A stretch of 47,348 nt of DNA. Source: Macrostomum lignano (taxonomy: Eukaryota). The DNA is taken from contig NIVC01000582.1 of NCBI GenBank assembly GCA_002269645.1, positions 1 to 47,348 on the forward strand, read 5' to 3'. Within the stretch, counting starts at the first letter, position 1, and every line of letters begins with the position of its first letter. The notes beneath the pieces are model-generated. The model was given only the letters and a program-made list of their open reading frames with translations, ran no database searches and had not been told where the DNA came from. This document shows, one piece after another, positions 15,067 through 43,703 of this stretch. A program made the translations under genes and the position numbers.

Positions 15067-16220
15067 ACCTCACCCCTCACACCCCTCACCCCTCAAACCC
15101 CTCACCCCTCAAACCCCTCACCCCTCAAACCCCTCACCCCTCAAACCCCTGACCCCTCAAACCCCTCACCCCTCAAACCCCTCACCCCCTCACCCCCTCA
15201 CCCCTCACCCCTCACACCCCTGACCCCTCAAACCCCTCACCCCTCACACCCCTCAAACCCCTCACCCCTCAAACCCTTCACCCCTCACCCTCAAACCCCT
15301 CACCCTCAAACCCCTCACCCCTCAAACCCCTCACCCCTCAAACCCCTCACCCCTCAAACCCCTCACCCCTCGCCCTCAAACCCCTCACACCTCACACCCC
15401 CTCACCCCTCAAACCCCTCACCCCTCAAACCCCTCACCCCTCAAACCCCTCACCCTCAAACCCCTCACCCCTCAAACCCCTCACCCCTCAAACCCCTCAC
15501 CCCTCAAACCCCTCACCGCTCGCCCTCAAACCCCTCACACCTCACACCCCCTCACCCCTCAAACCCCTCACCCCTCAAACCCCTCACCCCTCAAACCCCT
15601 CACCCCTCGCCCTCAAACCCCTCACACCTCACACCCGTCACCCCTCAAACCCCTCACCCCTCAAACCCCTCACCCCTCAAACCCCTCACCCCTCAAACCC
15701 CTCACCCCTCAAACCCCTCACCCCTCAAACCCCTCACCCCTCAAACCCCTCACCCTCAAACCCCTCACCCCTCAAACCCCTCACCCCTCAAACCCCTCAC
15801 CCCTCAAACCCCTCACCCTCAAACCCCTCACCCCTCAAACCCCTCACCCCTCGCCCTCAAACCCCTCACACCTCACACCCCCTCACCCCTCAAACCCCTC
15901 ACCCCTCAAACCCCTCACCCCTCAAACCCCTCACCCCTCGCCCTCAAACCCCTCACACCTCACACCCGTCACCCCTCAAACCCCTCACCCCTCAAACCCC
16001 TCACCCCTCAAATCCCTCACCCATCAAACTCCTCACCCCTCCAACCCCTCACCCCTCCAACCTCTCACCCCTCAAACCCCTCACCCCCAAACCCCTCACC
16101 CCTCAAACTCCTCACCCCTCAAACCCTTCATCCCTCAAACTCCTCACCCCTCAAACCCTTCATCCCTCAAACCCCTCACCCCTCAAACCTTCACCCCTCA
16201 AACCCCTCACCCCAAACCCC
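15067..16220. repeat. C-rich satellite built from CCCCTCA / CCCCTCAAA (16-bp AAACCCCTCACCCCTC units), about 1.15 kb, CDKL intron 5
   Basis: Directly visible. Source of the spurious 412-aa ORF. Confidence 0.95.
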
Positions 16221-16406
16221 TCTACCGTCATACAAAATCCAACGCCACAAGCTCGTATCCTGAAAAAACCTAGCTCAACAAAACCGCCTTATAATCGCTT
16301 CTCTAATGAAGTATAATGCTTCAAACTACATCTAGCTAAGTCATCCCAGCAGCTCAGTTAATGCACACTTTAAATAAATTTGTAAACTACATAAACCTAT
16401 ACGCAG

Positions 16407-19329: not shown

Positions 19330-20040
19330 AGGTGTGTTGGGGGGGGGGGGGGTAGCTGGAGTTAGGAAAGAAAGGGGTGGTGGGGTTAACAGCCAGGGTT
19401 AGAAAAGAAAGGGGTAGTGGTCACAACCAGGGTTATAAAAGAAAGGGGTAGTGGTCACAGCCTGGATTAGAAAAGAAAGGGGCGTTGAGGTTTAACAGCC
19501 AGGGTTAGAAAAGAAAGGGGTAGTGGTCACAGACAGGTTTAAAAAAGAAAGGGGTAGTGGTCACAGACAGGATTTGAAAAGAAAGGGGTGGTGGGGGTTA
19601 ACAGCCAGGGTTTGAAAAGAAAGGGGTGGTGGGGGTTAACAGCCAGGGTTAGAAAAGAAAGGGGTGGTGGGGGTTCACAGCCAGGGTTAGAAAAGAAAGG
19701 GGTGGTGGGGGTTCACAGCCACGGTTAGAAAAGAAAGGGGTGGTGGGGGTTCACAGCCAGGGTTAGAAAAGAAAGGGGTGGTGGGGGTTCACAGCCACGG
19801 TTAGAAAAGAAAGGGGTGGTGGGGGTTCACAGCCAGGGTTAGAAAAGAAAGGGGTGGTGGGGGTTCACAGCCAGGGTTAGAAAAGAAAGGGGTGGTGGGG
19901 GTTCACAGCCACGGTTAGAAAAGAAAGGGGTGGTGGGGGTTTACAGCCATGGTTAGAAAAGAAAGGGGTGGTGGGGGTTTACAGCCAGGGTTAGAAAGGA
20001 AAGTGGTGGGGGGGTTAACAGCCAGGGTTAGAAAAAAAAG
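19330..20040. repeat. 38-bp G-rich minisatellite (GGGTTAGAAAAGAAAGGGGTGGTGGGGGTTCACAGCCA), about 18 copies
   Basis: Period measured from TTAGAAA at 19687 and 19725. Confidence 0.93.
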
Positions 20041-20689
20041 TGGTTGGGTTAACAGTCGGAGTAGGAATGAGTTGTGGTATGGCTCTCGCCATGTACATTA
20101 GAATGTACAATTGCAGTTTTTTATTACATCGAATATTTTAACGCATCCAAATTTTAGTTCACCAGTCCTCAAAAACTGGAATGTACAATTCGAAGCCAAG
20201 AAAAGGTCAACCTCACTTGCACCTGTGCTAAGCGCTTGAAGCTAACCGACTAAAATTGTTGGAATTGGAGGAATTAGCATCCTTAAACAACTATACTTTG
20301 TTAATCATGCGAATGAGAGCAGCTGCGTAAATCTAATTCGTGAGCTAACAACTATGGTACTCGTACTAACACTCTTTCATCACTACTAATCCAGTAATAA
20401 ACATTGACTTTTGCTTTTTAATTTATAATCTTTAAGTTTTTTCTACGTATAGAAATCTAAGAAATTCGCTAGCTTAAAGCCGTGAATTGTATGAAGGATC
20501 ACTAGAAATGGGGCTGAAAGTTTTTTGAAATAGTAACAAAGGTTCAGCGTTTTTGGAAAATTTAATATTTAATGAGAAAACCGTGACAAACTAAAAAATA
20601 AGCTCTGGCATCAGAAACTTTTCGAATAATTTCTAAGAAACAAAATTTATCTTTTATTCTATGGGCGTAGCGTAGTTTAAAGTAGGGCT

Positions 20690-21355
20690 TTAGCACCAGG
20701 GGCTTTAGCACCAGGGGCTTTATCACCAGGGGCTTTAGCACAAGGGGCTTTATCACCAGGGGCTTTAGCACCAGGGGCTTTAGCACCAGGGGCTTTATCA
20801 CCAGGGGCTTTAGCACAAGGGGCTTTATCACCAGGGGCTTTAGCACCAGGGGCTTTAGCACCAGGGGCTTTATCACCAGGGGCTTTAGCACAAGGGGCTT
20901 TATCACCAGGGGCTTTAGCACCAGGGGCTTTAGCACCAGGGGCTTTATCACCAGGGGCTTTAGCACAAGGGGCTTTATCACCAGGGGCTTTAGCACCAGG
21001 GGCTTTAGCACCAGGGGCTTTATCACCAGGGGCTTTAGCACAAGGGGCTTTATCACCAGGGGCTTTAGCACCAGGGGCTTTAGCACCAGGGGCTTTATCA
21101 CCAGGGGCTTTAGCACAAGGGGCTTTATCACCAGGGGCTTTAGCACCAGGGGCTTTAGCACCAGGGGCTTTATCACCAGGGGCTTTAGCACAAGGGGCTT
21201 TATCACCAGGGGCTTTAGCACCAGGGGCTTTATCACCAGGGGCTTTATCACCAGGGGCTTTAGCACCAGGGGCTTTAGCACCAGGGGCTTTAGCACCAGG
21301 GGCTTTAGCACCATGCAGAGGCTTTAGCACCATGCAGAGGCTTTAGCACCAGGGG
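20690..21355. repeat. 15-bp minisatellite (GGGGCTTTAGCACCA) with 75-bp higher-order periodicity
   Basis: The CAA variant recurs at about 20731, 20806, 20881, 20956, 21031, 21106 and 21181. Confidence 0.95.
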
Positions 21356-22797
21356 CTTAATGGGCGCTAGCTAATGGGCGCCAGCACCATAAAAAGCACC
21401 AATAGCCATCATTTTCCGTTTTATCCGTCTATGTCTGGTAGTGGTAGAAAAACCAATAACCAAGCAAAAAGGAATCCAAACTACTTAAAGTAATAAACCA
21501 ATGTTTTTCAGACTTTTGGCAATCATCTTTTCCAAGACGGTGACTGCAAGCGGCGGTAGTCGGCAACAGCAGGTTATTTCGATTCGAGCCAAAGTTGATG
21601 CGAGTTTTAAAAAAAATCCAATTGTAAAAATGACTGTTTCAATCAACGAATATATTGATTTGCACCTGCTTTCCCGCTTCAGAGATTTGCGTAGTTACAG
21701 AGTTTAGGGATATAGTACTTACTACATAATAGTACTATAGCTCGTGTTTGGCTTGCAGACCTCGTGATTGGCTTGTGGTGCGCGAAAATCATGTCAAGTA
21801 TTCGATTTTATTAATGCTAATTAAAGTTAAAAATATGGATTTGCTTTTCCTCCAGAGTTTGATAGCCGCATAGTTTCTTACTTTGTATCTTTGTTTTATA
21901 GTTCTAGCTTTATAATTTTGTATTCTGATGATTTTTTTGAAATCCTGCAATTTGTTTATTTTCGTAAATAAAACAATTCGTTTTAATGAAAGTGTGCATG
22001 TACTTTAAGGCAAAACAGACTTTAATTTTAATTATAATTTTGGGATTTTTTCGAGACGAACGATGCTATACACTGAATTCAAGTGGGAATAATTTTTCAC
22101 TCTGAGTTTTGCACTTTTATAATCCACAAATAATAGAATCAATCGCTATGTCATTTTTCACCATATAAATCTACAATTTCCTTTCCTACAATTGGCTTGT
22201 TAGGCTCAAAATCCTGTTTGTCCTGACAACTCTCCTAAGGTACTATAGCGTGTATTATATGTTGTAGGCTTGTCTCGTCGCGTTGTGTGCACGGAGTCTG
22301 GTTGTTTTTTTGCCCGATCGAGATCTAGCTCTATGAGTCTATGTCCATTCGATTTGACCTACTTTGTGCCACTTTGGCCTACAAACGTGCACGCTTAACT
22401 AATAAGAATTAGAAAAATTGGCCAATTTTATCCACTTTTTTTATACATCTATGCATGTAATCCCGATTTGATTCCAAGAATATAACTGTTAAAGCCTACA
22501 GGTATATATGGTCAACATAATGCATGTACATGTACTTAAATACAATTAACTTAAACTAATATTTGTCAGTGTCATAATTTTAAAAATTGCTTAGGCCTTT
22601 TGACTAATTGATCAGACCTGACTGATGGGCAGGATGCATGTGTACTTAATGATTTTTTACTATCTTTCAATTATTTGGACTCTGATTTGTAAACAACTAC
22701 AACTTAGAATCAGGATGTGCATTTCTGCAGCTTTCTACGAAAGTAAGATCGAGCTACTTGTATTTAACCTGAGGATTAAATTTAGAATTGTCTGGTC

Positions 22798-28032: not shown

Positions 28033-28419
28033 ATGGCCGATTCAGCATCCGAGGCTGCCAAGCCAGCAACTGGAGGCGGAAAGAAAGGTAAAAAGCAGAA
28101 CAAAGGCACTAAAATGCATCTAACAGATTTTATTGGCGAGAATGTCGGCGTTGTTGGCAAACTCGAACAACAACCGGCCAGGCCCGCCGCCGATTGGGGC
28201 GAAGTGATGGAAGAAGAGGACCCCGGATTTGTTGGCCTGAACGATTTGCTCAGTTTGCGCAGAAACTTGCCAGCTGCGCCTAAGGCGGCAACTAAACCAG
28301 ATTTGGATTTGAGCAAAGTGCCTAAACAGCCTCCGTTTAAGGTTTATGTTGGCAGTTTGCCATTCGACACATCCGAGGAGAATGTTGCTAAGTTCTTCAA
28401 GGATCTGGACGTTGTCGAG
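28033..28419 (+). CDS. EIF4B: Eukaryotic translation initiation factor 4B, exon 1
   Basis: MADSAS...KKGKKQNKGTKMHLTDF...DWGEVMEEED...LPAAPKA...KVPKQPPFKVYVGSLPFDTSEE contains the eIF4B N-terminal motifs and RRM RNP2. Donor GAG|gtatgc. Confidence 0.9.
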
Positions 28420-28477
28420 GTATGCTATTAAACAATTTTTTTTACATTTTTTACGTTTGAAGCTGACTTTTTGTCCT

Positions 28478-28865
28478 CAGTTTCCCCATTATGGATTGGG
28501 AGCTTGGAATCCCAGTTTCCCTATGGTGGATTGGGAGTTTGGGATCCCAGTTTCCCTATGGTGGATTAGGAGTTTGGGATGCCAGTTTCCCTATGATGGA
28601 TTGGGAGTTTGGGATGCCAGTTTCCCTATAGTGGATTGGGAGTTTAGGATCCCAGTTTCCCTATGGTGGATTGGGAGTTTAGGATCCCAGTTTCCCTATG
28701 GTGGATTGGGAGTTTAGGATCCCAGTTTCCCTATGGTGGATTGGGAGTTTGGGATCCCAGTTTCCCTATGATGGATTGGGAGTTTGGGATGCCAGTTTCC
28801 CTATGATGGATTGGGAGTTTGGGATGCCAGTTTCCCTATGGTGGATTGGGAGTTAGGGATGCCAT
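28478..28865. repeat. 35-bp minisatellite (CAGTTTCCCTATGGTGGATTGGGAGTTTGGGATCC), about 11 copies, eIF4B intron 1
   Basis: Period measured from CAGTTT at 28513 and 28548. Confidence 0.95.
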
Positions 28866-28933
28866 TTTTCCAACAAATATGCCGAGATTTTAAAAGCCTC
28901 AAAACTTTCACGGTGCCGAACCCGAACCCTCAG

Positions 28934-30515
28934 ATTGATCTGCTCCGCAACGAACGCAACAGTCTGCGCGGATTTGGCTACGTGACCCTGCGCACAGCCG
29001 AGGACATGATCAAAGCTCTGCAGATGTCCGATCGCGCGATCGGTACAAGGCGAATCAAAATCGACTTCGTTGACAATCAGGCTGGCCAGGGCCAGCAGGC
29101 GGGCGGCAAGGGTCGGCCAGGACGTGACGGCCTACAAGCTGAGATGGCCTCCGAGACCGATAATAATTGGCGCAAAAGTGCGAGACCTCCGCCTCCTTCG
29201 TCGCCGGCCAACAACGGTTTCACCGGCGGCCGGGGCGGCGGTCGGGATTCTCGCGACGGCGGCATGTCGCGGCCGGAGCGTCGTCGAACGCCCAGCCCGC
29301 AGGGGCCGTGGCGGGCCGGTGCCAAGCCTCAGGGCCCACCGATGCGCGTCGGAGGCGGAGGTCGCGGCGGCGGCGCTGTCGGCGGCGGCATGGAGCGCCG
29401 GCCTGGCTGGGGCCGACAGGGAACCAGTCCGTCACGTGTCGACGCCGACACAAATTGGCGATCCGGTGGCGGCCCCAGGCGACGATCGCCGTCTCCTCGT
29501 TCTGGCGGCGGCGGTACCGCATTCGCTGGCAGGCGTCGCTCGCCTGCGGGTCCGTGGCGTCGGTCGCCTTCGCCGTTGAATCGGCGTCGACGTTCGCCGT
29601 CGCCAGACCGTGAACGTGGCCGGTCGCCTTCGCCGTCAAATCAGCGTCGACGATCGCCGCCGCCCAGATACAGCCGATCGCCGTCACCCAGAAGGCGATC
29701 GCCGTCGCCGAGAGGGCGATCCCCGTCACCGAGAAGGCGATCCCCGTCACCGAGAAGGCGATCCCCGTCACCGAGAAGGCGATCCCCGTCACCGAGAAGG
29801 CGATCGCCGTCGCCGAGAGGGCGATCCCCGTCACCGAGAAGGCGATCCCCGTCGCCGAGAAGGCGATCCCCGTCGCCGAGAAGGCGATCTCCGTCACCGA
29901 GTAGCCGATCTCCCTCGCCCAGAGATCGCCGTTCTCCGCCCAGGGATCGCCGTTCTCCGCCCAGGGATCGCCGTTCGCCGCCCAGAAATCGACGTTCGCC
30001 CTCGCCGCCCAGGCAGCGCAAGAAGCTAGTCCTGATTCCGCGCAGCAAGCCGCCAGCCGAATCAACTGACTCCGCCGCTCAAGCGCCGGCCGCCGCGGCA
30101 CCCGCAATTTTTGGCGCCGCCAAGCCGGTTGACACGGCGTCAGTTGAGCGTCGGATTGAAGAACGTCTGGAACGGGAGCGACAGCAGCAGGCGGCAACAG
30201 CTGGCGGCGAGAGTGGAGCGGGTCCAAGAAGGCAGCACGCTTCGTCGTCTAGCAGTAGAGTTGACGAGAATGAAAATGTCACAAATACTACTGCCGGAGT
30301 AGTAGCGTCGGCAGGTCACAGTCCCGGATCTAAAAAAGTTCGTCAACAGTCGTCATCGTCGGGAACTTCGGAGAAACAGCAGCAGCCACCGCAGGCGCCG
30401 CCTCCGCCCAAGATGGTCGACGCGAAGCCGCCAAGTGTCAACGTCTGGGAAGTTCGCAAGCAGAAGCAACAGCAGCAGCCGTCTGCTCAGCAGTCAGCTA
30501 ATTCGACTGGCAATG
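28934..30515 (+). CDS. EIF4B: eIF4B exon 2 (RRM second half, RGG region, RS/SP repeat domain, coiled coil)
   Basis: ccctcag|ATT...G|gtaaag. RNP1 is RGFGYVTL. KKLVLIPRS and AIFGAAKPVDTASVERRIEERLERE match the eIF4B IFGxAKPVDT...EERL motif. Confidence 0.9.
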
Positions 30516-30589
30516 GTAAAGTTGTGATTTATTCTAAACCGTGCCTTTTTAAGAATCGACCTATCGCGTGCAGCCATTCTAAGAATCAG

Positions 30590-30866
30590 CACAACCCCGC
30601 ATTTTGAAGAATTGCGACAAGCCCAGCATTTCTAAGAATTGCGACAAGCCCAGCATTTCTAAGAATTGCGAAAAGCCTAGCTTTTCTAAGAATTGCGACA
30701 AGCCTAGCATTTCTAAGAATTGCGACAAGCCTAGCATTTCTAAGAATTGCGACAAGCCCAGCATTTCTAAGAATTGCGACAAGCCTAGCTTTTCTAAGAA
30801 TTGCGACAAGCCTAGCATTTCTAAGAATTGCGACAAGCCCAGCATTTCTAAGAATTGTGACAAGCC
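30590..30866. repeat. 27-bp minisatellite (AAGAATTGCGACAAGCCTAGCATTTCT), about 10 copies, eIF4B intron 2
   Basis: Direct tandem copies. Confidence 0.95.
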
Positions 30867-31165
30867 TAGCCTAGTGGTTAGAGTGTCAGAGTCACGACTT
30901 GAATGTCGAGGTTCAATTCTTGACCCACTCGGAAGAACAATTTGTATCCTTGAGCAAGACACTTAACTCTGCATTGCTTCAGTTCACCCAGCTCTAAAAT
31001 GGGTGCCAGCATTAGCTGGGGTAATTGAGGGTGTGTGTGGCGACCCCCCAGTCCTTGGACTGAACAGCCGTACGCAGCCTTCAGATGCGCCACGCAATAG
31101 CTGCGGCTGAGCTCTCGGTTGCACATCTGCCCATTAAGGCAGGTGTAATCAATTATATTAATTAT
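30867..31165 (+). mobile_element. tRNA-derived SINE with a CORE (MIR-like) central domain
   Basis: A box TAGCCTAGTGG (30867) and B box GGTTCAATTC (30910). TTGTATCCTTGAGCAAGACACTTAACTCTGCATTGCTTCAGTTCACCCAGCTCTAAAATGGG (about 30942-31003) aligns by eye to the CORE-SINE consensus TGTGACCTTGGGCAAGTCACTTAACCTCTCTGTGCCTCAGTTTCCTCATCTGTAAAATGGG. The 3' end is AT-rich. Confidence 0.8.
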
Positions 31166-31179
31166 TTTTACAAGCATAG

Positions 31180-32298
31180 AATTTCTAAGAACCGGCACAA
31201 CCCCTAGCATTTCTAAGAACCGGCACAACCCCTAGCATTTCTAAGAACCGGCACAACCCCTAGCATTTCTAAGAACCGGCACAACCCCTAGCATTTCTAA
31301 GAACCGGCACAACCCCTAGCATTTCTAAGAACCGGCACAACCCCTAGCATTTCTAAGAACCGGCACAACCCCTAGCATTTCTAAGAACCGGCACGACCCT
31401 AGCATTTCTAAGAACCGGCACGACCCTAGCATTTCTAAGAACCGGCACAACCCCTAGCATTTCTAAGAACCGGCACGACCCTAGCATTTCTAAGAACCGG
31501 CACGACCCTAGCATTTCTAAGAACCGGCACGACCCTAGCATTTCTAAGAACCGGCACAACCCCTAGCATTTCTAAGAACCGGCACAACCCCTAGCATTTT
31601 TAAGAACCGGCACAACCCCTGGCATTTCTAAGAACCGGCACAACCCCTAGCATTTCTAAGAACCGGCACAACCTCTAGCATTTCTAAGAACCGGCACAAC
31701 CCTAGCATTTCTAAGAACCGGCACGACCCTAGCATTTCTAAGAACCGGCACAACCCCTAGCATTTCTAAGAACCGGCACAACCCTAGCATTTCTAAGAAC
31801 CGGCACGACCCTAGCATTTCTAAGAACCGGCACGACCCTAGCATTTCTAAGAACCGGCACAACCCCTAGCATTTCTAAGAACCGGCACAACCCCTAGCAT
31901 TTCTAAGAACCGGCACAACCCTAGCATTTCTAAGAGCCGGCACAACCCGTAGCATTTCTAAGAACCGGCACAACCCCTAGCATTTCTAAGAACCGGCACA
32001 ACCCCTAGCATTTCTAAGAACCGGCACAACCCCTAGCATTTCTAAGAACCGGCACAACCCCTAGCATTTCTAAGAACCGGCACAACCCCTAGCATTTCTA
32101 AGAACCGGCACAACCCCTAGCATTTCTAAGAACCGGCACAACCTCTAGCATTTCTAAGAACCGGCACAACCCCTAGCATTTCTAAGAACCGGCACAACCT
32201 CTAGAATTTCTAAGAACCGGCACAACCCCTAGCATTTCTAAGAACCGGCATAACCCCTAGCATTTCTAAGAACCGGCACAACCCCTAGCATTTCTAAA
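31180..32298. repeat. 27/28-bp minisatellite (AAGAACCGGCACAACCCCTAGCATTTCT), about 40 copies, eIF4B intron 2
   Basis: Direct tandem copies with ACAACCCC, ACAACCC and ACGACCC variants. Confidence 0.95.
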
Positions 32299-32371: not shown

Positions 32372-32658
32372 CTTCCCAATCAGCTTCATCAGCCACCACA
32401 GCTGCTGGCGCCAATCGACCGAGTGGCCCAGCGGCCCGTCAGCAGCAGCAGCCGCAACATCTGAAGCACCCAACGCCGAGTCAGGGCGCTTCATCTGCCG
32501 CTCAAGTTGCAGCCGCTCCAGCGCCCAATAGTGGCACGTTCACTGACGCCCCTAAGCCTCCAGTCAGCGCCTGGTCCAAGCCGCTGAGCATTGCTAAGAA
32601 ATCTGATGACCAGCCGACTGCAGCTCAGACTGTTGCGATTGAAGCCGAGGCTAAACAG
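32372..32658 (+). CDS. EIF4B: eIF4B exon 3
   Basis: ccctcag|CT...CAG|gtacgt; the phase-1 start matches exon 2. ...FTDAPKPPVSAWSKP... resembles the eIF4B C-terminal PPxxNAW motif. Confidence 0.78.
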
Positions 32659-33735: not shown

Positions 33736-33966
33736 GAGCCGGCGACGGTAGCAGCAGCGGCCGCAGACTCCACTGCAACAGCAGCCTCCGCTCCATCCGC
33801 TCGTCCAGTTAGACGCGTTGAAGTCTCCGTGAACGATCCCAACAATCCGGTTGTGGTTGCGCCGACAGCGTCTGACAAACCCAGCCAGCGGCCGCGGCCA
33901 GCCTGGGGCAATCAAGGTCGAACAGTCGCCGACATTGTCCGACAAGGTGCCAGCAACAAAGGCTAG
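33736..33966 (+). CDS. EIF4B: eIF4B terminal exon
   Basis: ccacag|GAG, phase 0. EPATVAAAAADS...RPAWGNQGRTVADIVRQGASNKG*. The spliced CDS totals 2487 nt, or 828 aa plus stop. Confidence 0.72.
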   Translation, partial: EPATVAAAAADSTATAASAPSARPVRRVEVSVNDPNNPVVVAPTASDKPSQRPRPAWGNQGRTVADIVRQGASNKG

Positions 33967-35946: not shown

Positions 35947-36108
35947 TCAACCCAATTTTGATCGAATCTCTTTGTGCACATTCAGCAGGAAGTCCACATA
36001 GGAGGAGCCCCAGCCTTCGCCGCTCGCTGAGAAGTCGCTGGCTCGATCTTCAACCAGGAAGTTGAGAAACCACGATTCGAATTTGTCACCGGGTCGGACG
36101 ATGTACAG
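35947..36108 (-). CDS. SEC24C: Sec24C/D COPII coat subunit, terminal exon 10
   Basis: ctacag|CTG. LYIVRPGDKFESWFLNFLVEDR...SYVDFLLNVHKEIRSKLG* is the conserved Sec24 C-terminus. Confidence 0.92.
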   Translation of the reverse strand: MYIVRPGDKFESWFLNFLVEDRASDFSASGEGWGSSYVDFLLNVHKEIRSKLG

Positions 36109-36206
36109 CTGTAGGGGGGCGGCATAGAGTGCTCTGTAGCTTTGCACCCAGCGAGATCAAGAATGACAGACACTAAAACAGACAGACAGACAAAACCCAG
36201 TCCTAC

Positions 36207-36296
36207 CCTGAGATGCCGGCGGCGTCTCAACCGTATCTCGTCGACAAGTCGGCGAATCAGTCTCGAAGCTGGCGTGTCTAGCCGGGGCAGTTCCGT
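36207..36296 (-). CDS. SEC24C: Sec24C/D exon 9
   Basis: cgacag|...AGG|gtagga. TELPRLDTPASRLIRRLVDEIRLRRRRHLR. Confidence 0.88.
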
Positions 36297-36372
36297 CTGT
36301 CGGAAAGCAAATTAATAAATAAGCTTATCCACTGGTCCCTCACAGTACAGACAACATTTTAAAAAGCCTTAC

Positions 36373-36476
36373 CTGATCGCAGCGTACGTTTGCCACGGAA
36401 TTTACTCCGAAAACACTTAAAAGCCAGGTCGAACTGACCTTTGATCCCAGCCAGAGGAACATGACTATGCCGTTTT
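36373..36476 (-). CDS. SEC24C: Sec24C/D exon 8 (gelsolin-like domain)
   Basis: ttttcag|AA...CAG|gtaagg. ENGIVMFLWLGSKVSSTWLLSVFGV. Confidence 0.9.
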
Positions 36477-36705
36477 CTGAAAATACATCAACAATTTCAA
36501 GTGAAAACTCGCTACATTTCTATCAACAGTAACAGTAAAAAGTTTTAGATTCTCAAAAATTAGATTCTTAAAAATGAAGCTAATATCCGCTACTTGCTTA
36601 TTAAAAAGTAGAATAATAAGGCTTTTTTATAAAATAAAATAAGCTACTTTAAAATACATATTTGCTACTTATCTACTAACAGTAGCAGTATGAAGAAATC
36701 CTCAC

Positions 36706-36978
36706 CTAACAAGTAAACACCGTTTTGTTTTAATCGATCAACAGAGCAGCGGATTTGTTTCACATTTAACTCGCACAGATCGGCTGAGTCAGACTCTTTT
36801 CCATCTCCAACACCGTCTTGCGCCTCGTCGCTGTCTGATTCGTCATCAGCTTCTCTAGACGGCGGCAAATGGTGGACGGGCATTAGTCTGGGATAGAAGT
36901 ACACGTTCGAGGCCACGGCGTCCATCATTGAGCACAGGTACATAAGGTAGGACCGATCGTCTGTGGATATGTCAGCCC
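36706..36978 (-). CDS. SEC24C: Sec24C/D exon 7
   Basis: cgttcag|GG...G|gtgagg. ADISTDDRSYLM...YFYPRLMPVH...IRCSVDRLKQNGVYLL. Confidence 0.92.
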
Positions 36979-37057
36979 CTGAACGGAGAGAGCAAATTAA
37001 GGATAGATTTATGCGTATAGGCTGGCAGTCAGACGGTCGCACCGCCGACTAAAAGCA

Positions 37058-37260
37058 AGAAAACAGACAGTCAGAAAGACAGACAGAAAGACAGACAGAC
37101 AGACAGACAGACAGATAGACAGACGGGCAGACAGACAGACAGACACTAAGACAGGCAGGCAGACCCTAAGACAGACGAGCAGACAGACAGGCAGACAAAC
37201 AGACAGACAGACATACAGACAGACAGACGAGCAGACAGACACTAAGACAGGCAGGCAGGC

Positions 37261-37292
<32 letters not shown>

Positions 37293-37300
37293 GGTCAAGC

Positions 37301-37360
<60 letters not shown>

Positions 37361-37440
37361 AGACAGGCAGACTCAGACAGACAGACAAACAGACAGACAG
37401 ACAAACAGACAGACAGAGAGAAAGACAGGCAGACAGACAC
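37058..37440. repeat. (GACA)n microsatellite on the + strand, near the 3' end of Sec24 intron 6
   Basis: Directly visible. Contains CACTAAGACAGG variants at about 37144 and 37240. Confidence 0.95.
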
Positions 37441-37942
37441 TCGAAAAGCATAACAAGCTTTTATAATCAAATAAACATTAATAAACAAGTCCTGTTTAAA
37501 AGGATAAAAGTAAAAAAATCGCAACACACTACTGAAAATGCAGGAAAGAAACAAGAAAACAACTGCCTGTTTAAATAATAAACAAAAACGGTAAAAAAAC
37601 GAGCCAATTGAGCCAGAAGCAGTTCCCAGCTGAAAAAAAACAACACTAGCAAATTCATCCGGCATCCGATGATGAAAGTGAGCAGAGGCTGGAATACTGG
37701 TAGATCATATGCAGGGCCTTTTAAGACCAGCAGCTGACAATTACCCAGCAAATTGGAGTAGCGACTAAGTGCTGGCTTCAACGATTGACAGCTGCCTAAA
37801 TTGTGGCGTGTTCAGCATTCGCTTGCAGTGCACAATGTAATCAAGGGAGTGATTTCTAGACTGCAAGACTACGGGGCTGCGACATGACGCCAAGTCTTGC
37901 ATAAATGCTGCTGTCTTGTGCCAGACTGTGTGCACCCCCACT

Positions 37943-38027
37943 CTGTCTGTCTGTCTGTCTGTCTGTCTGCCTGCCTGCCTGCCTGTCTGCCTGCCTGTCT
38001 GTCTGTCTGCCTGCCTGTCTGTCTGCC

Positions 38028-38100
<73 letters not shown>

Positions 38101-38111
38101 GCCTGCCTGCC

Positions 38112-38162
<51 letters not shown>

Positions 38163-38218
38163 TGTCTGTCTGTCTGTCTGCCTGCCTGCCTGCCTGTCTG
38201 TCTGTCTGTCTGTCTGAC

Positions 38219-38253
<35 letters not shown>

Positions 38254-38299
38254 GTCTGTCTGTCGTCTGTCTGTCTGTCTGCCTGCCTGTCTGTCTGCC

Positions 38300-38348
<49 letters not shown>

Positions 38349-38359
38349 GCCTGCCTGCC

Positions 38360-38402
<43 letters not shown>

Positions 38403-38551
38403 TGTCTGTCTGTCTGTCTGCCTGCCTGCCTGCCTGTCTGTCTGTCTGTCTGTCTGACTGTCTGTCTGTCTGTCTGTCTGTCTGTGTCTGTCTGTCGTCT
38501 GCCTGTCTGTCTGTCTGTCTGTCTATCTGTCTGTCTGTCTGCCTGCCTGCC

Positions 38552-38586
<35 letters not shown>

Positions 38587-38614
38587 TGTCTGTCTGTCTG
38601 TCTGCCTGCCTGCC

Positions 38615-38649
<35 letters not shown>

Positions 38650-38847
38650 TGTCTGTCTGTCTGTCTGCCTGCCTGCCTGCCTGTCTGTCTGTCTGTCTGA
38701 CTGTCTGCCTGTCTGTTGTCTGTCTGTCTGCCTGCCTGCCTGTCTGTCTGTCTGTCTATCTGTCTGTCTGTCTGCCTGCCTGTCTGTCTGCCTGTCTGTC
38801 TGTTGTCTGTCTGTCTGTCTGCCTGCCTGCCTGTCTGTCTGTCTGAC

Positions 38848-38894
<47 letters not shown>

Positions 38895-38912
38895 GTCTGT
38901 CTGTCGTCTGCC

Positions 38913-38965
<53 letters not shown>

Positions 38966-39002
38966 TTTTGTCTGTCTGTCTGTCTGCCTGTCTGTCTGTC
39001 TG

Positions 39003-39052
<50 letters not shown>

Positions 39053-39098
39053 GCCTGCCTGTCTGTCTGTCTGTCGTCTGCCTGCCTGTCTGTCTGTA

Positions 39099-39181
<83 letters not shown>

Positions 39182-39216
39182 GTCTGTCTATCTGTCTGCC
39201 TGCCTGCCTGCCTGCC

Positions 39217-39277
<61 letters not shown>

Positions 39278-39298
39278 GCCTGTCTGTCTGTCGTCTGC
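37943..39298. repeat. (TGTC)n/(TGCC)n microsatellite of about 1.35 kb, at the 5' end of Sec24 intron 6
   Basis: Directly visible. Source of the VCLS/QTDR ORFs. Confidence 0.97.
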
Positions 39299-39331
39299 CC
39301 CAATACTACGCAAAACGGAACCGAACCTCAC

Positions 39332-39914
39332 CTTGAAAGGCGTCGCTCTTCACAATGGCATTAACGTACACCGGCATGAGCTTGAGCGTCTCTGGCAGGA
39401 TCAGCTGGCCCATGGAGCTGCCAGCTGAGACGCAGTGCCGCCTATAGGCAGTCAGGATGCCAACACACCGGCTGACCAGAGCGGACCTGGCTTCTAGCGG
39501 TCCCTTTTTCAGTAACAATTTCAGAGCAGCTTTGACTAACAGATTCAAGGTGGCGTCAACATCGGCCGATCGATACATATCGGCCAGCTGACCTGTGGTG
39601 GCCAAGGCCAGATTGTGCACCCGAACCCGGCGATGCCCGGACAGTCCGGTGTACAGCAGGGCGCACTGGGCCAGCACAGGCTCTGCATCGTCGTCGGCAA
39701 GTTTAGAATCGTGACGCAGTTCAACGGCCACAGCTCGATCGGACGAGAACGCGCCGGCTTCCAGTATGCCTTCGCCGACGATGTTGAAGCCGCCGTGAAT
39801 GTCGGAGCAGCTGATCCCGGCGCTGGTTCGAATCCGCATCGAACAGTCGAATGCCAGACAGTTGGATACGGCCAGTTCTAGATCGCTGGCTAGTTGATTT
39901 CCGTGCGTGTCCGA
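39332..39914 (-). CDS. SEC24C: Sec24C/D exon 6 (beta-sandwich and helical domains)
   Basis: ctgcag|TCG...G|gtgagg. FDCSMRIRTSAG...VELRHDSKL...AQCALLYTGLSGHRRVRVHNLAL...GQLILPETLKLMPVYVNAIVKSDAF. Confidence 0.95.
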
Positions 39915-40054
39915 CTGCAGTAGGTAGTGAGTAGTATAAATAGCGTTTTTTGGAATTATTGTTGCAAATTAGCAAAAATTTGTTGCGAGGTAATTTGGTA
40001 TTGATGCGACATTAAATCAACTGACTTTTTATAACTGTCTGACTTGGCGCCCAA

Positions 40055-40500
40055 GTGGCTGTCTCAGTGTCTTTCTGTCTGTCTAAGTGCTTTTCTGTCA
40101 GCCTGTCTTAGTGCCTTAAGTGTCTCAGTGTCTTTCTGTCAGTCTTAGTGCTTTTCTGTCAGCCTGTCTTAGTGCCTTAAGTGTCTCAGTGTCTTTCTGT
40201 CTGTCTTAGTGCTTTTCTGTCAGCCTGTCTTAGTGCCTTAAGTGTCTCAGTGTCTTTCTGTCTGTCTTAGTGCTTTTCTGTCAGCCTGTCTTAGTGCCTT
40301 AAGTGTCTCAGTGTCTTTCTGTCTGTCTTAGTGCTTTTCTGTCAGCCTGTCTTAGTGCCTTAAGTGTCTCAGTGTCTTTCTGTCAGTCTTAGTGCTTTTC
40401 TGTCAGCCTGTCTTAGTGCCTTAAGTGTCTCAGTGTCTTTCTGTCTGTCTTAGTGTCTTTCTGTCTGTCTTAGTGCTTTTCTGTCAGCCTGTCTTAGTGC
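40055..40500. repeat. 61-bp minisatellite built from TGTC and CTTAGTG modules, about 7 copies, Sec24 intron 5
   Basis: Period measured from CTTAGTGCTTT at 40144 and 40205. Confidence 0.92.
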
Positions 40501-40523
40501 CTTAAGTGTCTTAGTGTCTTTCC

Positions 40524-40567
<44 letters not shown>

Positions 40568-40586
40568 TAGTGTCTTAGTGTCTTAG

Positions 40587-40633
<47 letters not shown>

Positions 40634-40674
40634 CTGTCTGACTGTCTGTCTGTCTTAGTGTCTTAGTGTCTTAG

Positions 40675-40773
<99 letters not shown>

Positions 40774-40818
40774 TTGTCTGTCTGTCTGTCTGTCTATTTG
40801 TCTGTATGTCTGTCTTAG

Positions 40819-40915
<97 letters not shown>

Positions 40916-40955
40916 GACTGTCTGTCTGTCTGTCTGTCTGTCTGTCTGCCTGCCT
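40500..40955. repeat. (TGTC)n microsatellite with CTTAGTGT interruptions, Sec24 intron 5
   Basis: Directly visible. Confidence 0.95.
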
Positions 40956-41011
40956 TAGTGTCCCAGTGCAGAGGCAAAGCAACGCAAAACACGGGCGAAA
41001 AACAGCCTCAC

Positions 41012-41632
41012 CCGAAAGCTGGCATATTTATACAGAGATCCGCCAGTTATGAAAGGCAGCTGGCCCAGCGTGGCCACATCGGCATAAGCCGCATCCGTGC
41101 AGACGAACAGGTCAACACCCAGACCGGAGTCTGAGCACCGCTTAGCCAAAGCTTCGTAATAATCTCCCACAGGAGACAGCAGACTGGATTCCTTCTCAGT
41201 GCCAAGCAGCTTTCTATTGTCTCTTTGCAGCAATTTGCCTGGAGCAGATTCGCAGGTGGGCAGACCCGTGTGCAGCAGAACCAATTTGCCAACACTGCCG
41301 CAGGAAGTGAACGCGTCCAGTGTGGCTTCAACAACTGGTCCAAGTATGATGTCGGAGACTGCTGTGTCAGCGAACTGTTGCGGAATCGATTCCAATAATT
41401 GGTCGATCAACGTTGCCGATGAAGACAAGTCGACTAGGAAACCGCCGGATATTGCTGCTCCTAGAGGAGCGAATGGTTCCTCTAAATCTGACACAATTAA
41501 TGACTGCGGCTGGGACAGACTGGCTGACAGGTTGTAGAAGTGAACGCTGCGGTCGTAGGTCAGAAAGCCGACCCGAGGAGAAACTTGAGTTTGCCAGTCT
41601 GGTGCTGTCTCGCTTGGCAGGAAGGCTGGCAG
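41012..41632 (-). CDS. SEC24C: Sec24C/D exon 5 (vWA/trunk domain)
   Basis: acgcag|CTG...CGG|gtgagg, 621 nt. [16 protein letters not shown]...[18 protein letters not shown]...GVDLF...DVATLG...TGGSLYKY. Confidence 0.95.
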
Positions 41633-41694
41633 CTGCGTTTGAAGGAAGGGGTTTAAAGGGAATTTAATCGGGACGAATGGAGAACGGGAAACTA

Positions 41695-42080
41695 GATAGG
41701 ACCGGAAGTTGAGTATCTAACAATAGTTGACTGGAAGTTGATTATCTAACAATAGTTGACCGGAAGTTGATTATCTAACAATAGTTGACCGGAAGTGGAT
41801 TATCTAACAATAGTTGACCGGAAGTGGATTAGGCTAACAATAGAGAGCGGAAAGTGGATTAGCTACAATAGTTGACCGGAAGTGGATTAGCTAAAAATAT
41901 AGAACCGGAAGTGGATTAGCTAAAAATAGAGAGCGGGAAGTGGATTAGCTAAAAATATAGAACCGGAAGTGGATTAGCTAAAAATATAGAACCGGAAGTG
42001 GATTAGGCTAACAATAGAGAGCGGGAAGTGGATTAGCTACAATAGTTGACCGGAAGTGGATTAGCTAACAATAGATACTG
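41695..42080. repeat. 29-30-bp minisatellite containing ACCGGAAGT(G), about 13 copies, Sec24 intron 4
   Basis: Units such as GACCGGAAGTTGATTATCTAACAATAGTT diverge along the array. Confidence 0.9.
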
Positions 42081-42121
42081 TAATTGAACAGGAAAGCAGA
42101 GAATAACAAATTCTGCCTTAC

Positions 42122-42352
42122 TCGCCGACGCAGATGATCGCAGACCAGCGCAGTGAGGCCGGAGTGTACAGCTCTGTAGCTGACATCGATAGCGAACACG
42201 ATGCCCGGCGGTGGCGACTCGTTGAAGGTGGCGCGGTCGCCCCGGCGATATTCTAGGCCCGGGGCGGGCAGCTCGTAGGAGCCCAGACGCAGTTCCGGTC
42301 GATAGGCGGCGTCAACCCGACAGCCGGTCTGGTCCAGATGGGCGAAGTACGA
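42122..42352 (-). CDS. SEC24C: Sec24C/D exon 4
   Basis: ctgcag|TCG...CGA|gtaagg. SYFAHLDQTGCRVDAAYRPELRLGSYEL...IVFAIDVSYRAVHSG. Confidence 0.93.
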
Positions 42353-42489
42353 CTGCAGATTGTAGGGGGGGGCGCAATATGCATCGATTTTTTATTTTAC
42401 ATGGAGCTAACAGAATAAATAGATACAGACATAAGAAAAGATTAGATAACACAATATATGCTTCTAATTAAAGCATTATCGTTAAAAAC

Positions 42490-43160
42490 CGGACATAATA
42501 ATTAGGGCGCGCATTTAAAAAAAACGAAAATAATAAATAAGGGCGTGGATTCAAACAAACAAAAACAATAATCAAGGCGCGCATTTTAACAAAAAAGATA
42601 ATAAACAAGGACACGCAATTAAACAAACAAAACGATAATGATGGAGCGCGCATTAAGAAACGAAAATAAATAGGGACAAGCATTTAAACAAACTAAAATT
42701 ATAAATAGGGCGCGCATTTTAAACAAAACAAAATTTTGACTAGGGCGCGGATTCAAACAAAAGAAAATTATATAGGGGCGCGGATTCAAACAAAAGAAAA
42801 TTATAGATAGGGCGCGCATTTAAACAAAAGAAAATTATAAATAGGGCGCGCATTTAAACAAAAGAAAATTATAGATAGGGCGCGCATTTAAACAAAAAAA
42901 ATTATAAATAGGGCGCGCATTTAAACAAAAAAAATTATAAATAGGGCACGCATTAAAACAAACGAAAACTATAAATAGGGCGCGGATTTTAACTAAAGAA
43001 AGTTATGAATAGAGCGCGCATTAAAACAAACGAAAATTATAAATAGGGCGCGGATTTTAACTAAAGAAAATTATAAATAGCGCGCATTTAAACAAAATAA
43101 AATTATAAATAGGGCGCGCATTTTAACTAAAGAAAATTATAAATAGGGCGCGCATTTTAA
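42490..43160. repeat. About 34-bp AT-rich minisatellite (TATAAATAGGGCGCGCATTTAAACAAAAGAAAAT), Sec24 intron 3
   Basis: Period measured from AGGGCG at 42843 and 42877. The left part is degenerate. Confidence 0.9.
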
Positions 43161-43165
43161 CAAAC

Positions 43166-43703
43166 CTGAGGCGTATCTGTCCGCGCCCCGCAGAAGCCGC
43201 ACTGGAAGCGCCGGCCGCCATCAAGCCAGGCCATGTAGGGACTCATGTAGGCTCGACAGCGAATGCATCGAACAATCGAATCTTCGCCGCCGCCGCCGCC
43301 GCCGGAGCCGCCTAGCCCGCTAGTTGCTATGGAAACCGAACCGCCCGAGCCGGATTTTGTAGCAGGCATCATTGGCGCTACAATCAGGCCCATAGCCAGG
43401 CCGCCAGACGATTTCAACAGGTCGCTAGTCCGTGGCACCGAACTCAGAGTTGGCCGCATGAACGTAGGCAGACTCGAGCCGCAGTCGGTCATGATCAGCC
43501 GGTCAACCGAGGTCACCAGCGGAGGCGGCCGGCCAATATTGGCCGGGCCAGACTCGTAATGGCAGGTTCCGCTTGACGACAAACTCGCGGAGGCTTGGAA
43601 TCGGCGAAGATCGTCTTCGAGCACGTGGACTGCCGATGGCATCTGGTCGGGATGGAGACTGCGCTGCTGCTGCTGGGAGATCTGCCATTGTTGGGAATAT
43701 AGT
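43166..43703 (-). CDS. SEC24C: Sec24C/D exon 3 (includes the zinc finger); the acceptor position is uncertain
   Basis: HPDQMPSAVHVLEDD...PPLVTS...DCGSSLPTFMRPTL...RCIRCRAYMSPY...FQCGFC. Donor CAG|gtttgt. Confidence 0.88.

What the first reader, a model, noticed from the sequence alone, without database searches (positions are those of the whole stretch)
29480..30010. eIF4B whose DRYG region is replaced by an SR-protein-like (RRRSPSP)n domain encoded by a coding minisatellite
Seen: between the RRM/RGG region and the conserved KKLxLxPRS / IFGxAKPVDT block lie about 11 near-perfect 21-bp units (GAAGGCGATCCCCGTCACCGA) encoding RRRSPSP, then RDRRSPP x3, plus scattered RRSPSP copies, all in an intact frame. 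Established: vertebrate eIF4B has a DRYG-rich region here that mediates self-association and eIF3a binding, while R/S/P repeats of this kind typify SRRM1-like splicing coactivators and are SRPK/CLK/CDK substrates and transportin-SR import signals. Inference: a translation initiation factor that may be phospho-switched, nuclear-shuttling or condensate-forming, linking splicing-type regulation to initiation.
Basis: partly seen in the sequence, partly recalled or inferred. Interest (0 to 1): 0.72.

Follow-up and report, generated by a model that had tools for sequence, protein, structure and literature searches.

The report
Flatworm eIF4B with arginine-serine-proline repeat linker
The flatworm Macrostomum lignano makes a normal-looking translation factor eIF4B, except that the acidic, tyrosine-rich stretch other animals have after the RNA-binding domain is replaced by a strongly basic run of RRRSPSP repeats; the repeat DNA still varies in copy number, and the protein probably needs phosphorylation to regain the usual charge balance.

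Summary
Window 29687-29917 holds 11 tandem 21-bp units encoding PRRRSPS. They are followed by RDRRSPP x3 plus one RNRRSP unit (29918-30001) and preceded by older scattered RRRSPSP copies. All lie in one open frame inside a 1.58-kb exon.

The window is a whole Macrostomum lignano contig. The gene is an eIF4B orthologue by every collinear motif except the DRYG region. The deposited RNA-seq-guided model (PAA80418.1) equals my four-exon model and keeps the repeat.

Across 111 other eIF4B linkers, net charge per residue is about 0 (maximum +0.16) with at most 5 Ser/Thr-Pro sites. This linker is +0.23 (net +70), has 43 such sites, and has the lowest aromatic content. Full phosphorylation would bring it back to about neutral.

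It is not an SR protein: 27% RS content, no alternating runs, and 39 of 44 serines precede proline. RSP-type repeats are not unique to it. A Ciona-like eIF4B has (PPRRRDS)n in its linker, and fireflies have RRRSPD repeats C-terminally. Short tandem repeats in this linker are common.

Verdict: real, a new variant of a known kind, moderately interesting. The function is inferred only. Other flatworm orthologues could not be retrieved.

The parts
28033..28419 (+). Exon 1 of eIF4B. It holds the ATG, the N-terminal KKGKKQNKGTKMHLTDF basic motif and the first half of the RRM, and ends GAG|gt.
   Evidence: translation, GT donor. (the N-terminal motif is invariant across eIF4Bs). (the deposited model is identical).
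28478..28868 (+). Intron-1 minisatellite, 35 bp x 11.2. It is context for the finding, not coding.
   Evidence: Intron 1 is 100% identical in the sister locus.
28934..30515 (+). Exon 2 (1582 nt). It holds the second half of the RRM, the RGG/WR region, the RSP repeats, the KKLVLIPRS and IFGAAKPVDT blocks and the PPPP...NVWEVRK region.
   Evidence: The exon has an AG acceptor and a GT donor.
28342..29059 (+). RRM domain (aa 104-171), split by intron 1.
   Evidence: Pfam RRM_1, E=2.6e-11, profile positions 1-70 of 70. The best solved-structure matches are human eIF4B, E=1.8e-18, against eIF4H at 4.7e-12.
29087..29473 (+). Gly/Arg-rich part of the linker with xWRxxxxP motifs (NNWRKSARP, GPWRAGAKP, TNWRSGGGP). 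It holds one early RRRTPSP copy at 29279.
29474..30007 (+). RSP-rich segment (aa 310-487, 178 aa). It has 44 Ser and 39 Ser-Pro sites; a slightly wider 183-aa cut counted 63 Arg, 47 Pro and 5 Asp/Glu. It occupies the position of the DRYG region.
29687..29917 (+). Young coding minisatellite: 11 units of 21 bp (CCG AGA AGG CGA TCC CCG TCA = PRRRSPS).
   Evidence: The sister locus has 12 units.
29918..30001 (+). Second 21-bp array: PRDRRSP x3 plus PRNRRSP.
30020..30046 (+). KKLVLIPRS, the conserved [RK]PKLxLxPR[ST] block of eIF4B.
30107..30136 (+). IFGAAKPVDT, the eIF4B signature block. It is followed by ERRIEERLERER.
   Evidence: F, G, A, P, V, D and T are invariant in 16 sequences.
32372..32658 (+). 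Exon 3. A second annotated acceptor lies 18 nt downstream at 32390.
33736..33966 (+). Exon 4, ending with the stop codon.

Best explanation
This is the eIF4B orthologue of Macrostomum lignano, 828 aa from the ATG at 28033. In other animals the disordered linker between the RRM and the KLxLxPR/FGxAKPVDT block is a charge-balanced Arg/Asp/Tyr/Gly region, itself often built of short tandem repeats. Here the linker has been rebuilt as a Gly/Arg-rich part followed by about 180 residues of RRRSPSP-type heptads.

Shown: the youngest heptads are an 11-unit 21-bp minisatellite. It changes copy number in whole units between near-identical gene copies. This is expected from replication slippage or unequal exchange in a genome where 15% of the DNA is simple or tandem repeat. 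Variation between units falls on third codon positions. Older copies encode the same peptide with different codons, so the peptide itself has been kept.

Inferred: the segment does the usual job of this linker, that is multivalent disordered contacts with RNA, the 40S subunit, eIF3 and itself. Negative charge is supplied by phosphorylation of its 43 Ser/Thr-Pro sites instead of by Asp/Glu. Unphosphorylated it is a polycation (net +70). Fully phosphorylated it is near neutral, like every other eIF4B linker. That would make its RNA binding and self-association tunable by proline-directed CMGC kinases (CDK, MAPK, DYRK, CLK).
For: Identity: the N-terminal KKGKK..L.DF motif, the RRM, the WR motifs, the KLxLxPR[ST] block, FGxAKPVDT and IEERL are collinear with 15 other eIF4Bs. 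The RRM's best solved relatives are human eIF4B, E=1.8e-18. The nearest named hits are annotated eIF4B.

Gene model: four exons with canonical GT-AG borders. The model equals deposited PAA80418.1 on this 47,348-bp contig. That annotation is RNA-seq genome-guided (PMC5730564).

Frame: 6 of 7 variable columns in the units are third codon positions. Changes are 11 synonymous to 4 non-synonymous in the RRRSPSP frame, against 0 to 15 in the KAIPVTE frame used by two UniProt models. Older copies use CGT/CGA codons where the array uses AGA/AGG.

Instability: the sister locus differs in the coding sequence by one nucleotide and exactly one 21-bp unit.

Outlier status: net charge per residue is +0.23, against a median of +0.01 and a maximum of +0.16 in 111 other linkers. 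Ser/Thr-Pro sites number 43 against at most 5. Aromatic content is 0.026 against a minimum of 0.049. Net charge is +70, and +5.5 to -16 if all sites carry -1.5 to -2.

Repeat-built linkers are a family habit: 47 of 111 have a 5-mer present three or more times.

The DRYG region mediates self-association and eIF3a binding through Arg/Asp and Tyr contacts, and its conservation is already reported to fade outside mammals (PMC11464913). CLK accepts Ser-Pro and SRPK does not (PMC8040976).
Against: No phosphorylation, localisation or binding data exist for this protein, so the charge-neutralisation argument is arithmetic only. The synonymous bias among units is modest: by my hand count, 5 of 8 distinct variant types are synonymous against about 32% expected. 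The antisense frame shares the same wobble positions. The deposited model of the sister locus lacks 105 nt (5 units) of its own genomic array, so some transcripts may carry fewer units. A genome this rich in minisatellites could produce such an array with little selective meaning. The survey covers 111 sequences from the best 150 profile hits and contains no other flatworm.
Confidence: 0.55

Rival explanations
1. Tolerated spacer. The RSP array is a nearly neutral by-product of genome-wide minisatellite instability. The linker only has to be long, disordered and Arg-rich, and phosphorylation plays no particular part.
For: About 25 distinct tandem arrays lie in 47 kb, and 15% of the genome is simple or tandem repeat. 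Copy number differs between near-identical copies. Linker repeats of many compositions occur in other eIF4Bs. DRYG conservation is known to fade outside mammals.
Against: Charge balance is kept in all 111 other linkers and is broken only here unless phosphate is added. The same heptapeptide is kept with diverged codons in older copies. Variation between units is biased to third codon positions.
Confidence: 0.25
2. Constitutive polycationic RNA-binding arm. The unphosphorylated Arg-rich array acts like an extra arginine-rich motif that clamps mRNA or rRNA. It would compensate for the lost DRYG contacts.
For: The linker has a net charge of +70 and is 26% Arg. eIF4B already uses an arginine-rich region for RNA binding, and removing DRYG lowers RNA affinity (PMC11464913). 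The yeast 7-repeats region binds single-stranded RNA and the 40S subunit (PMC8762332).
Against: Nearly every serine sits in a Ser-Pro kinase site, which a pure RNA clamp does not need. No other eIF4B linker tolerates such a charge.
Confidence: 0.12
3. One reading: an SR-protein-type domain that makes eIF4B shuttle to the nucleus through SRPK and transportin-SR and couples splicing-type regulation to initiation.
For: The composition is rich in Arg, Ser and Pro. Low-complexity hits of the array are splicing-related RS proteins. M. lignano trans-splices about 39% of its genes, which is circumstantial only.
Against: RS/SR content is 27% with no alternating runs, and the domain is internal, not C-terminal. 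Serines followed by proline are not SRPK sites. No PWI domain or other splicing domain was found; Pfam finds only the RRM.
Confidence: 0.05
4. The array is not translated as RRRSPSP. Either it is spliced out as an internal intron, or it is read in the KAIPVTE frame as in UniProt A0A1I8G7U0 and A0A1I8G1N2.
For: Two database models read the other frame. The sister locus's deposited protein lacks 5 units.
Against: The other frame needs 35-nt and 22-nt 'introns' and meets a stop codon in the last unit (my reading). It gives 0 synonymous to 15 non-synonymous unit changes. No GT-AG placement exists for the 105-nt gap. The RNA-guided model for this contig keeps all 11 units in the RRRSPSP frame.
Confidence: 0.03

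Closest known systems
Human and other animal eIF4B with a DRYG-rich linker
   Same: Same order of parts: N-terminal basic motif, one RRM, xWRxxxxP motifs, a disordered Arg-rich low-complexity linker often made of short tandem repeats, the KLxLxPR[ST] block, FGxAKPVDT, IEERL, and a C-terminal PPP..W region.
   Different: The linker has almost no Asp/Glu (5% against a median of 21%) and Tyr+Phe at 1% against a median of 7%. It has 17% Ser and 20% Pro, net charge per residue +0.23 against about 0, and 43 Ser/Thr-Pro sites against at most 5. At 310 aa it is the longest of the set (median 147, maximum 266).
Yeast eIF4B (Tif3) 7-repeats domain
   Same: A lineage-specific repeat region after the RRM takes the place of DRYG. 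In yeast it binds the 40S subunit, single-stranded RNA and eIF4A (PMC8762332). This shows the position tolerates wholesale replacement.
   Different: The yeast repeats are about 26 aa, imperfect and not RSP-rich. No sequence relation was detected.
SR proteins and SR-related proteins (SRSF family; SRRM1/SRRM2-type RS domains)
   Same: Arg/Ser(/Pro)-rich low complexity next to an RRM. Many predicted CMGC-kinase sites. The array's database hits are RS-domain proteins.
   Different: RS/SR content is 27% with no consecutive RS runs. The domain is internal. There is no PWI domain. The rest of the protein is eIF4B. This is a resemblance of composition, not membership.
Unnamed eIF4B from Logan run SRR28167754 (P0022/L002). 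Its closest named relative in my set is Ciona savignyi.
   Same: A 21-nt coding tandem repeat ((PPRRRDS)n, at least 6.7 copies, cut by the contig end) and further RSP-rich sequence (RRRTPSPQ, RRRPSPR) lie in the eIF4B linker, upstream of the KIVLQPRS block.
   Different: It keeps a DRYG-like GGDRYERGG stretch after the RSP part. Each heptad carries an Asp. It is a distant lineage, so the resemblance is probably convergent.
Firefly (Photinus, Pyrocoelia, Abscondita) and Mormon cricket eIF4B
   Same: RRRSPD/SPRRRSP-type repeats occur within an eIF4B.
   Different: Their repeats lie C-terminal to FGxAKPVDT. Their linkers remain acidic-basic DRYG-like.

Membership tests
eIF4B | N-terminal basic motif GKKGKK..x..L.DF | tested here: met
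   GGGKKGKKQNKGTKMHLTDF aligns with all 15 others, and the K, K, K and F columns are invariant.
eIF4B | A single RRM closest to the eIF4B RRM | tested here: met
   Pfam RRM_1, E=2.6e-11, full length. Top PDB matches are eIF4B 6fec/2j76/1wi8 at 1.8e-18 to 4.4e-17, with eIF4H at 4.7e-12.
eIF4B | Conserved [RK]PKLxLxPR[ST] ... FGxAKPVDT ... IEERL block after the linker | tested here: met
   RKKLVLIPRS, IFGAAKPVDT and RRIEERLERER are present. F, G, A, P, V, D, T, I, E and L are invariant.
eIF4B | DRYG-rich linker (Asp/Arg/Tyr/Gly, charge-balanced) between the RRM and that block | tested here: not met
   Asp+Glu is 5%, Tyr+Phe 1%, and net charge per residue +0.23 against a median of +0.01 in 111 others. 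DRYG is already known to be poorly conserved outside mammals and absent in yeast, so this does not exclude orthology.
eIF4B | Stimulates the eIF4A helicase and binds eIF3/40S | not testable with these tools
   This needs biochemistry.
SR proteins (SRSF; definition recalled from Manley and Krainer 2010, my own knowledge) | RRM(s) followed by a C-terminal RS domain of at least 50 aa with more than 40% RS content in consecutive RS/SR dipeptides | tested here: not met
   27% of residues lie in RS/SR dipeptides. The longest alternating run is 3 residues. The domain is internal, with about 340 aa following it.
SRRM1-type SR-related coactivators | PWI domain plus an RS/P-rich region | tested here: not met
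   Pfam finds only the RRM. The RS/P-rich composition alone is shared.
Coding minisatellite | Head-to-tail units of 10-100 bp, period a multiple of 3, open frame, copy number varying in whole units | tested here: met
   21 bp x 11.2 at 92% identity, frame open. The window has 11 units, the sister locus 12, that locus's deposited transcript model 7, and UniProt A0A1I8G7U0 a further arrangement.

The most novel reading that the evidence does not exclude
In this flatworm the conserved charge balance of the eIF4B linker has been handed over entirely to kinases. eIF4B would be an obligate phosphoprotein whose RNA, 40S and eIF3 contacts and self-association are switched by proline-directed (cell-cycle or stress) kinases acting on about 40 sites. 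This would tie bulk or selective translation initiation to CDK/MAPK/CLK activity in a stem-cell-rich, regenerating animal. It would be a natural experiment in which Asp/Glu are swapped for phosphoserine in a condensate-forming disordered region.
Probability: 0.25. Interest if true: 0.7.

Novelty: new variant of a known kind. Interest (0 to 1): 0.42.

Why it matters
eIF4B's DRYG region is the part that drives self-association, eIF3a binding and phase separation in human cells (PMC11464913). How much of that depends on the exact residues is an open question. Here a natural orthologue keeps every other eIF4B landmark but replaces the acid/tyrosine chemistry with Arg plus Ser-Pro sites. The number of sites is about what is needed to restore neutrality if all are phosphorylated. 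If that holds, it is a ready-made test of whether charge pattern, not sequence, is what the linker needs. It would also be a case where a housekeeping initiation factor has become kinase-gated. M. lignano has RNA interference (my own knowledge) and transgenesis (PMC5730564), so this can be tested. If it does not hold, the locus is still a clean example of a coding minisatellite turning over inside an essential gene.

Tried and rejected
1. Other flatworm eIF4Bs. Three word-indexed protein searches were run: the full protein, a repeat-masked protein, and the conserved blocks only. They returned only M. lignano's own copies plus arthropod, sponge, fungal and unnamed sequences. The profile search lists only its best 150 hits. 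The 30 representatives I looked up by name included insects, a springtail, chelicerates, tunicates, a lamprey, a nemertean, a mollusc and a sponge, and no flatworm. The phylum question stays open.

2. A canonical second paralogue. No other M. lignano protein appeared. The closest non-self hit, P0047, proved sponge-like (nearest to Ephydatia). Sensitivity is limited, so absence is not proven.

3. Direct cDNA evidence. P0001 maps only to the genome assembly. The gene identifiers were not found in the text or supplements of M. lignano papers.

4. P0008 and P0164, whose RKKLVL-type block resembles the flatworm's, were considered as possible flatworm relatives. They cluster with the springtail Orchesella and were rejected.

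5. Splicing of the 105-nt gap in the sister model. No GT-AG placement exists, though five GC-AG placements do. I judge it a mapping artefact or a shorter allele, but this is not proven.

6. Rfam and tRNA scans of the window found nothing.

7. A literature search for RS-like or Ser-Pro-rich eIF4B found nothing.

Full report
WHAT IS THERE

Tandem Repeats Finder gives a 21-bp array at 29675-29910 (11.2 copies, 92% matches) and a second 21-bp array at 29916-29997 (3.9 copies). In codon register there are 11 units from 29687 to 29917: eight PRRRSPS, two PRGRSPS and a terminal PSSRSPS. Then come PRDRRSP x3 and PRNRRSP. The consensus unit occurs 10 times within 3 mismatches, against none in 100 shuffles. 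Six older heptads of the same type (RRRTPSP, RRRSPSP, RRRSPAG, RRRSPSP, RGRSPSP, RRRSPPP) lie upstream at 29279-29665. One frame is open from 28784 to 30607.

ORGANISM AND GENE MODEL

The closest database proteins are from the flatworm Macrostomum lignano. A cluster look-up shows that PAA80418.1 (BOX15_Mlig012539g2, 838 aa) sits on a contig of exactly 47,348 bp, which is this window. I built the model independently. The four exons are 28033-28419, 28934-30515, 32372-32658 and 33736-33966, all with GT-AG borders, giving 828 aa from the first ATG. It equals the deposited protein apart from a 10-residue 5' extension flagged as partial.

That annotation comes from a genome-guided RNA-seq assembly using StringTie, TACO and mapped de novo transcripts (PMC5730564). 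The retention of the repeat in exon 2 therefore has transcript-level support, though not long-read proof.

Two UniProt models from an older assembly (A0A1I8G7U0, A0A1I8G1N2) read the array as KAIPVTE. To do so they need micro-introns of 35 and 22 nt, and that frame meets a stop codon in the last unit. This is my reading.

WHICH FRAME IS REAL

Of the seven variable columns among the 11 units, six are third codon positions in the RRRSPSP frame. Changes from the consensus are 11 synonymous to 4 non-synonymous in that frame and 0 to 15 in the KAIPVTE frame. The antisense frame that shares wobble positions scores similarly (12 to 3). Only the sense frame, however, is continuous with the RRM upstream and the eIF4B blocks downstream.

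The older scattered copies encode the same heptapeptide with CGT/CGA Arg codons, where the young array uses AGA/AGG. The peptide theme therefore predates the recent expansion and has been kept while the DNA diverged.

IT IS AN eIF4B

An alignment with 15 eIF4Bs shows the same order of parts:
- the N-terminal GKKGKK..L.DF motif;
- one RRM;
- xWRxxxxP motifs;
- a low-complexity linker;
- [RK]PKLxLxPR[ST], FGxAKPVDT and IEERL;
- a C-terminal PPP..W region.

Pfam finds a full-length RRM_1. The RRM's best solved relatives are human eIF4B (E=1.8e-18), ahead of eIF4H (4.7e-12). Named relatives are annotated eIF4B in insects, a springtail, chelicerates, a lamprey and a mollusc.

HOW UNUSUAL IS THE LINKER

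A profile search of 1.84 billion representative proteins gave 531 hits below 1e-30, and I analysed the best 150. For every sequence in which the RRM core, the KLxLxPR block and FGxAKPVDT could be located, I cut out the linker. This gave 111 sequences besides M. lignano's own copies.

| Measure | 111 other linkers | M. lignano linker |
|---|---|---|
| Net charge per residue | median +0.01, range -0.06 to +0.16 | +0.23 (85 basic, 15 acidic, net +70) |
| Ser/Thr-Pro sites | median 0, maximum 5 | 43 |
| Aromatic fraction | minimum 0.049 | 0.026 |
| Length (aa) | median 147, maximum 266 | 310 |

If every Ser/Thr-Pro site carried -1.5 to -2, the net charge would be +5.5 to -16, which is back in the range of all other eIF4Bs. 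This is arithmetic, not a measurement. It is the main reason I favour a phosphorylation-dependent reading.

WHAT IS NOT UNUSUAL

Building this linker from short tandem repeats is a family habit. Of the 111 linkers, 47 contain a 5-mer at least three times and 21 at least five times. Examples are (GGDRDRGY)n in a nemertean, (GDRDGGRSF)n in an abalone and (DDFRRPEPTPRS)n in a springtail-like sequence.

RSP-type repeats also occur elsewhere in the family. An unnamed eIF4B fragment (P0022, Logan run SRR28167754) has a 21-nt array encoding (PPRRRDS)n that runs off the contig end. Further RSP-rich sequence follows, and then a DRYG-like stretch. Its closest named relative in my set is Ciona savignyi. 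Fireflies and a cricket carry RRRSPD-type repeats C-terminal to the FGxAKPVDT block.

The literature already notes that DRYG conservation fades outside mammals (PMC11464913). Yeast has an unrelated 7-repeats domain at this position (PMC8762332).

THE ARRAY IS STILL CHANGING

A second M. lignano locus (NIVC01002857.1, L001) is syntenic. Its coding sequence differs from the window's by one nucleotide (30206 G/A, Gly/Ser) and exactly one extra 21-bp unit. The assembly is known to hold duplicated chromosome copies.

That locus's deposited protein (P0001) equals its genomic exon 2 minus 105 nt, which is five units. No placement of that gap has GT-AG ends, though five have GC-AG. I read this as a shorter transcript allele or a collapsed short-read assembly mapped back, but real internal splicing is not excluded. 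One UniProt model shows yet another unit arrangement.

The window as a whole carries about 25 distinct tandem arrays in 47 kb. This fits the reported 15% simple/tandem repeat content.

IS IT 'SR-PROTEIN-LIKE'?

Only in composition. In the 178-aa segment (aa 310-487):
- 27% of residues lie in RS or SR dipeptides;
- the longest alternating run is three residues;
- 39 of 44 serines are followed by proline;
- 22 serines are R-S-P;
- 12 sites fit the full S/T-P-x-K/R pattern.

By the usual definition of SR proteins (recalled, not tested against a database) this fails. There is no PWI or other splicing domain. CLK accepts Ser-Pro while SRPK acts on Arg-Ser (PMC8040976). CDK, MAPK, DYRK or CLK-type kinases are therefore the likelier writers; this is an inference. 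Nothing here speaks to nuclear import.

MOST LIKELY EXPLANATION AND RIVALS

Shown: this is an eIF4B orthologue whose DRYG-position linker is an RGG region followed by an RSP-heptad region. The youngest part of it is an unstable in-frame minisatellite with signs of constraint on the peptide.

Inferred: the segment does the linker's usual multivalent job, with phosphoserine standing in for Asp/Glu, which makes it kinase-tunable.

Rivals:
- a tolerated, nearly neutral spacer;
- a constitutive polycationic RNA-binding arm;
- non-translation of the array.

Probabilities and refuting results for each are given in the structured fields.

LIMITS

No other flatworm eIF4B could be obtained, so I cannot say whether RSP linkers are widespread in the phylum. 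A second, canonical paralogue was not seen, but the searches were not exhaustive. There are no expression, phosphorylation or localisation data.

VERDICT

This is a real feature, correctly observed. It is a new variant of a known kind: lineage-specific turnover of the disordered linker of eIF4B. It is made more interesting by its extreme charge and by the near-exact match between the number of kinase sites and the missing negative charge.

Noticed in passing
window 1-47348: Tandem repeats are extremely dense: 48 Tandem Repeats Finder rows, about 25 distinct arrays with periods of 4 to 124 bp. Examples are a 16-bp unit x70 at 15068-16222, a 28-bp unit x40 at 31177-32297 and (TCTG)344 at 37942-39297. 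Many lie in introns.
   Followed up: partly
window 30577-30870 and 31177-32297 (intron 2): Two different minisatellites (27-bp and 28-bp units) share the core AGCATTTCTAAGAA. A roughly 300-bp unique segment (30871-31176) separates them. By eye it looks like a tRNA-derived SINE, but ARAGORN and Rfam find nothing there.
   Followed up: partly
window 32372 vs 32390: Two annotated acceptors for exon 3 lie 18 nt apart and in frame. The six residues SQSASS after the junction are present in PAA80418.1 and PAA54818.1 and absent in the UniProt models. This could be alternative splicing.
   Followed up: no
UniProt A0A1I8G7U0 / A0A1I8G1N2 (P0002, P0003): These models read the repeat in the wrong frame (KAIPVTE) by means of 35-nt and 22-nt micro-introns. 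They look like gene-prediction artefacts and hide the RSP domain from database users.
   Followed up: yes
L001 11685-11936 (NIVC01002857.1): The sister locus has 12 units, but its deposited protein PAA54818.1 has 7. The 105-nt gap cannot be given GT-AG ends.
   Followed up: yes
L002 1-250 (Logan SRR28167754 contig 5213): An unnamed, Ciona-like eIF4B carries a 21-nt coding repeat (PPRRRDS)n that runs off the contig end, next to a DRYG-like stretch. It is an independent RSP-type linker repeat.
   Followed up: partly
P0004, P0071/P0218, P0059 (fireflies); P0007 (Anabrus simplex): Firefly eIF4Bs, and less strongly a cricket eIF4B, carry RRRSPD/SPRRRSP repeats in the C-terminal region, with 7-21 RSP-like sites. 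Their linkers stay DRYG-like.
   Followed up: partly
window 27958 and 27991: In-frame ATGs lie upstream of the 28033 start. The deposited transcript model begins at about 28003, so 28033 is the first ATG in that mRNA.
   Followed up: no
window 29687-29917: The young array uses AGA/AGG Arg codons, so each unit contains the purine-rich GAGAAGG. The older copies use CGN codons. Purine-rich repeats of this kind can act as exonic splicing enhancers, which may matter for a 1.58-kb exon.
   Followed up: no
window ~36000-44000 (minus strand) and ~19500-21500, by synteny with L001: In the sister locus the annotated neighbours are a Sec23/Sec24-family gene downstream on the opposite strand and a protein-kinase gene upstream. 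The Sec24-like gene's introns hold kilobase-scale (ACAG)n/(TCTG)n tracts.
   Followed up: no
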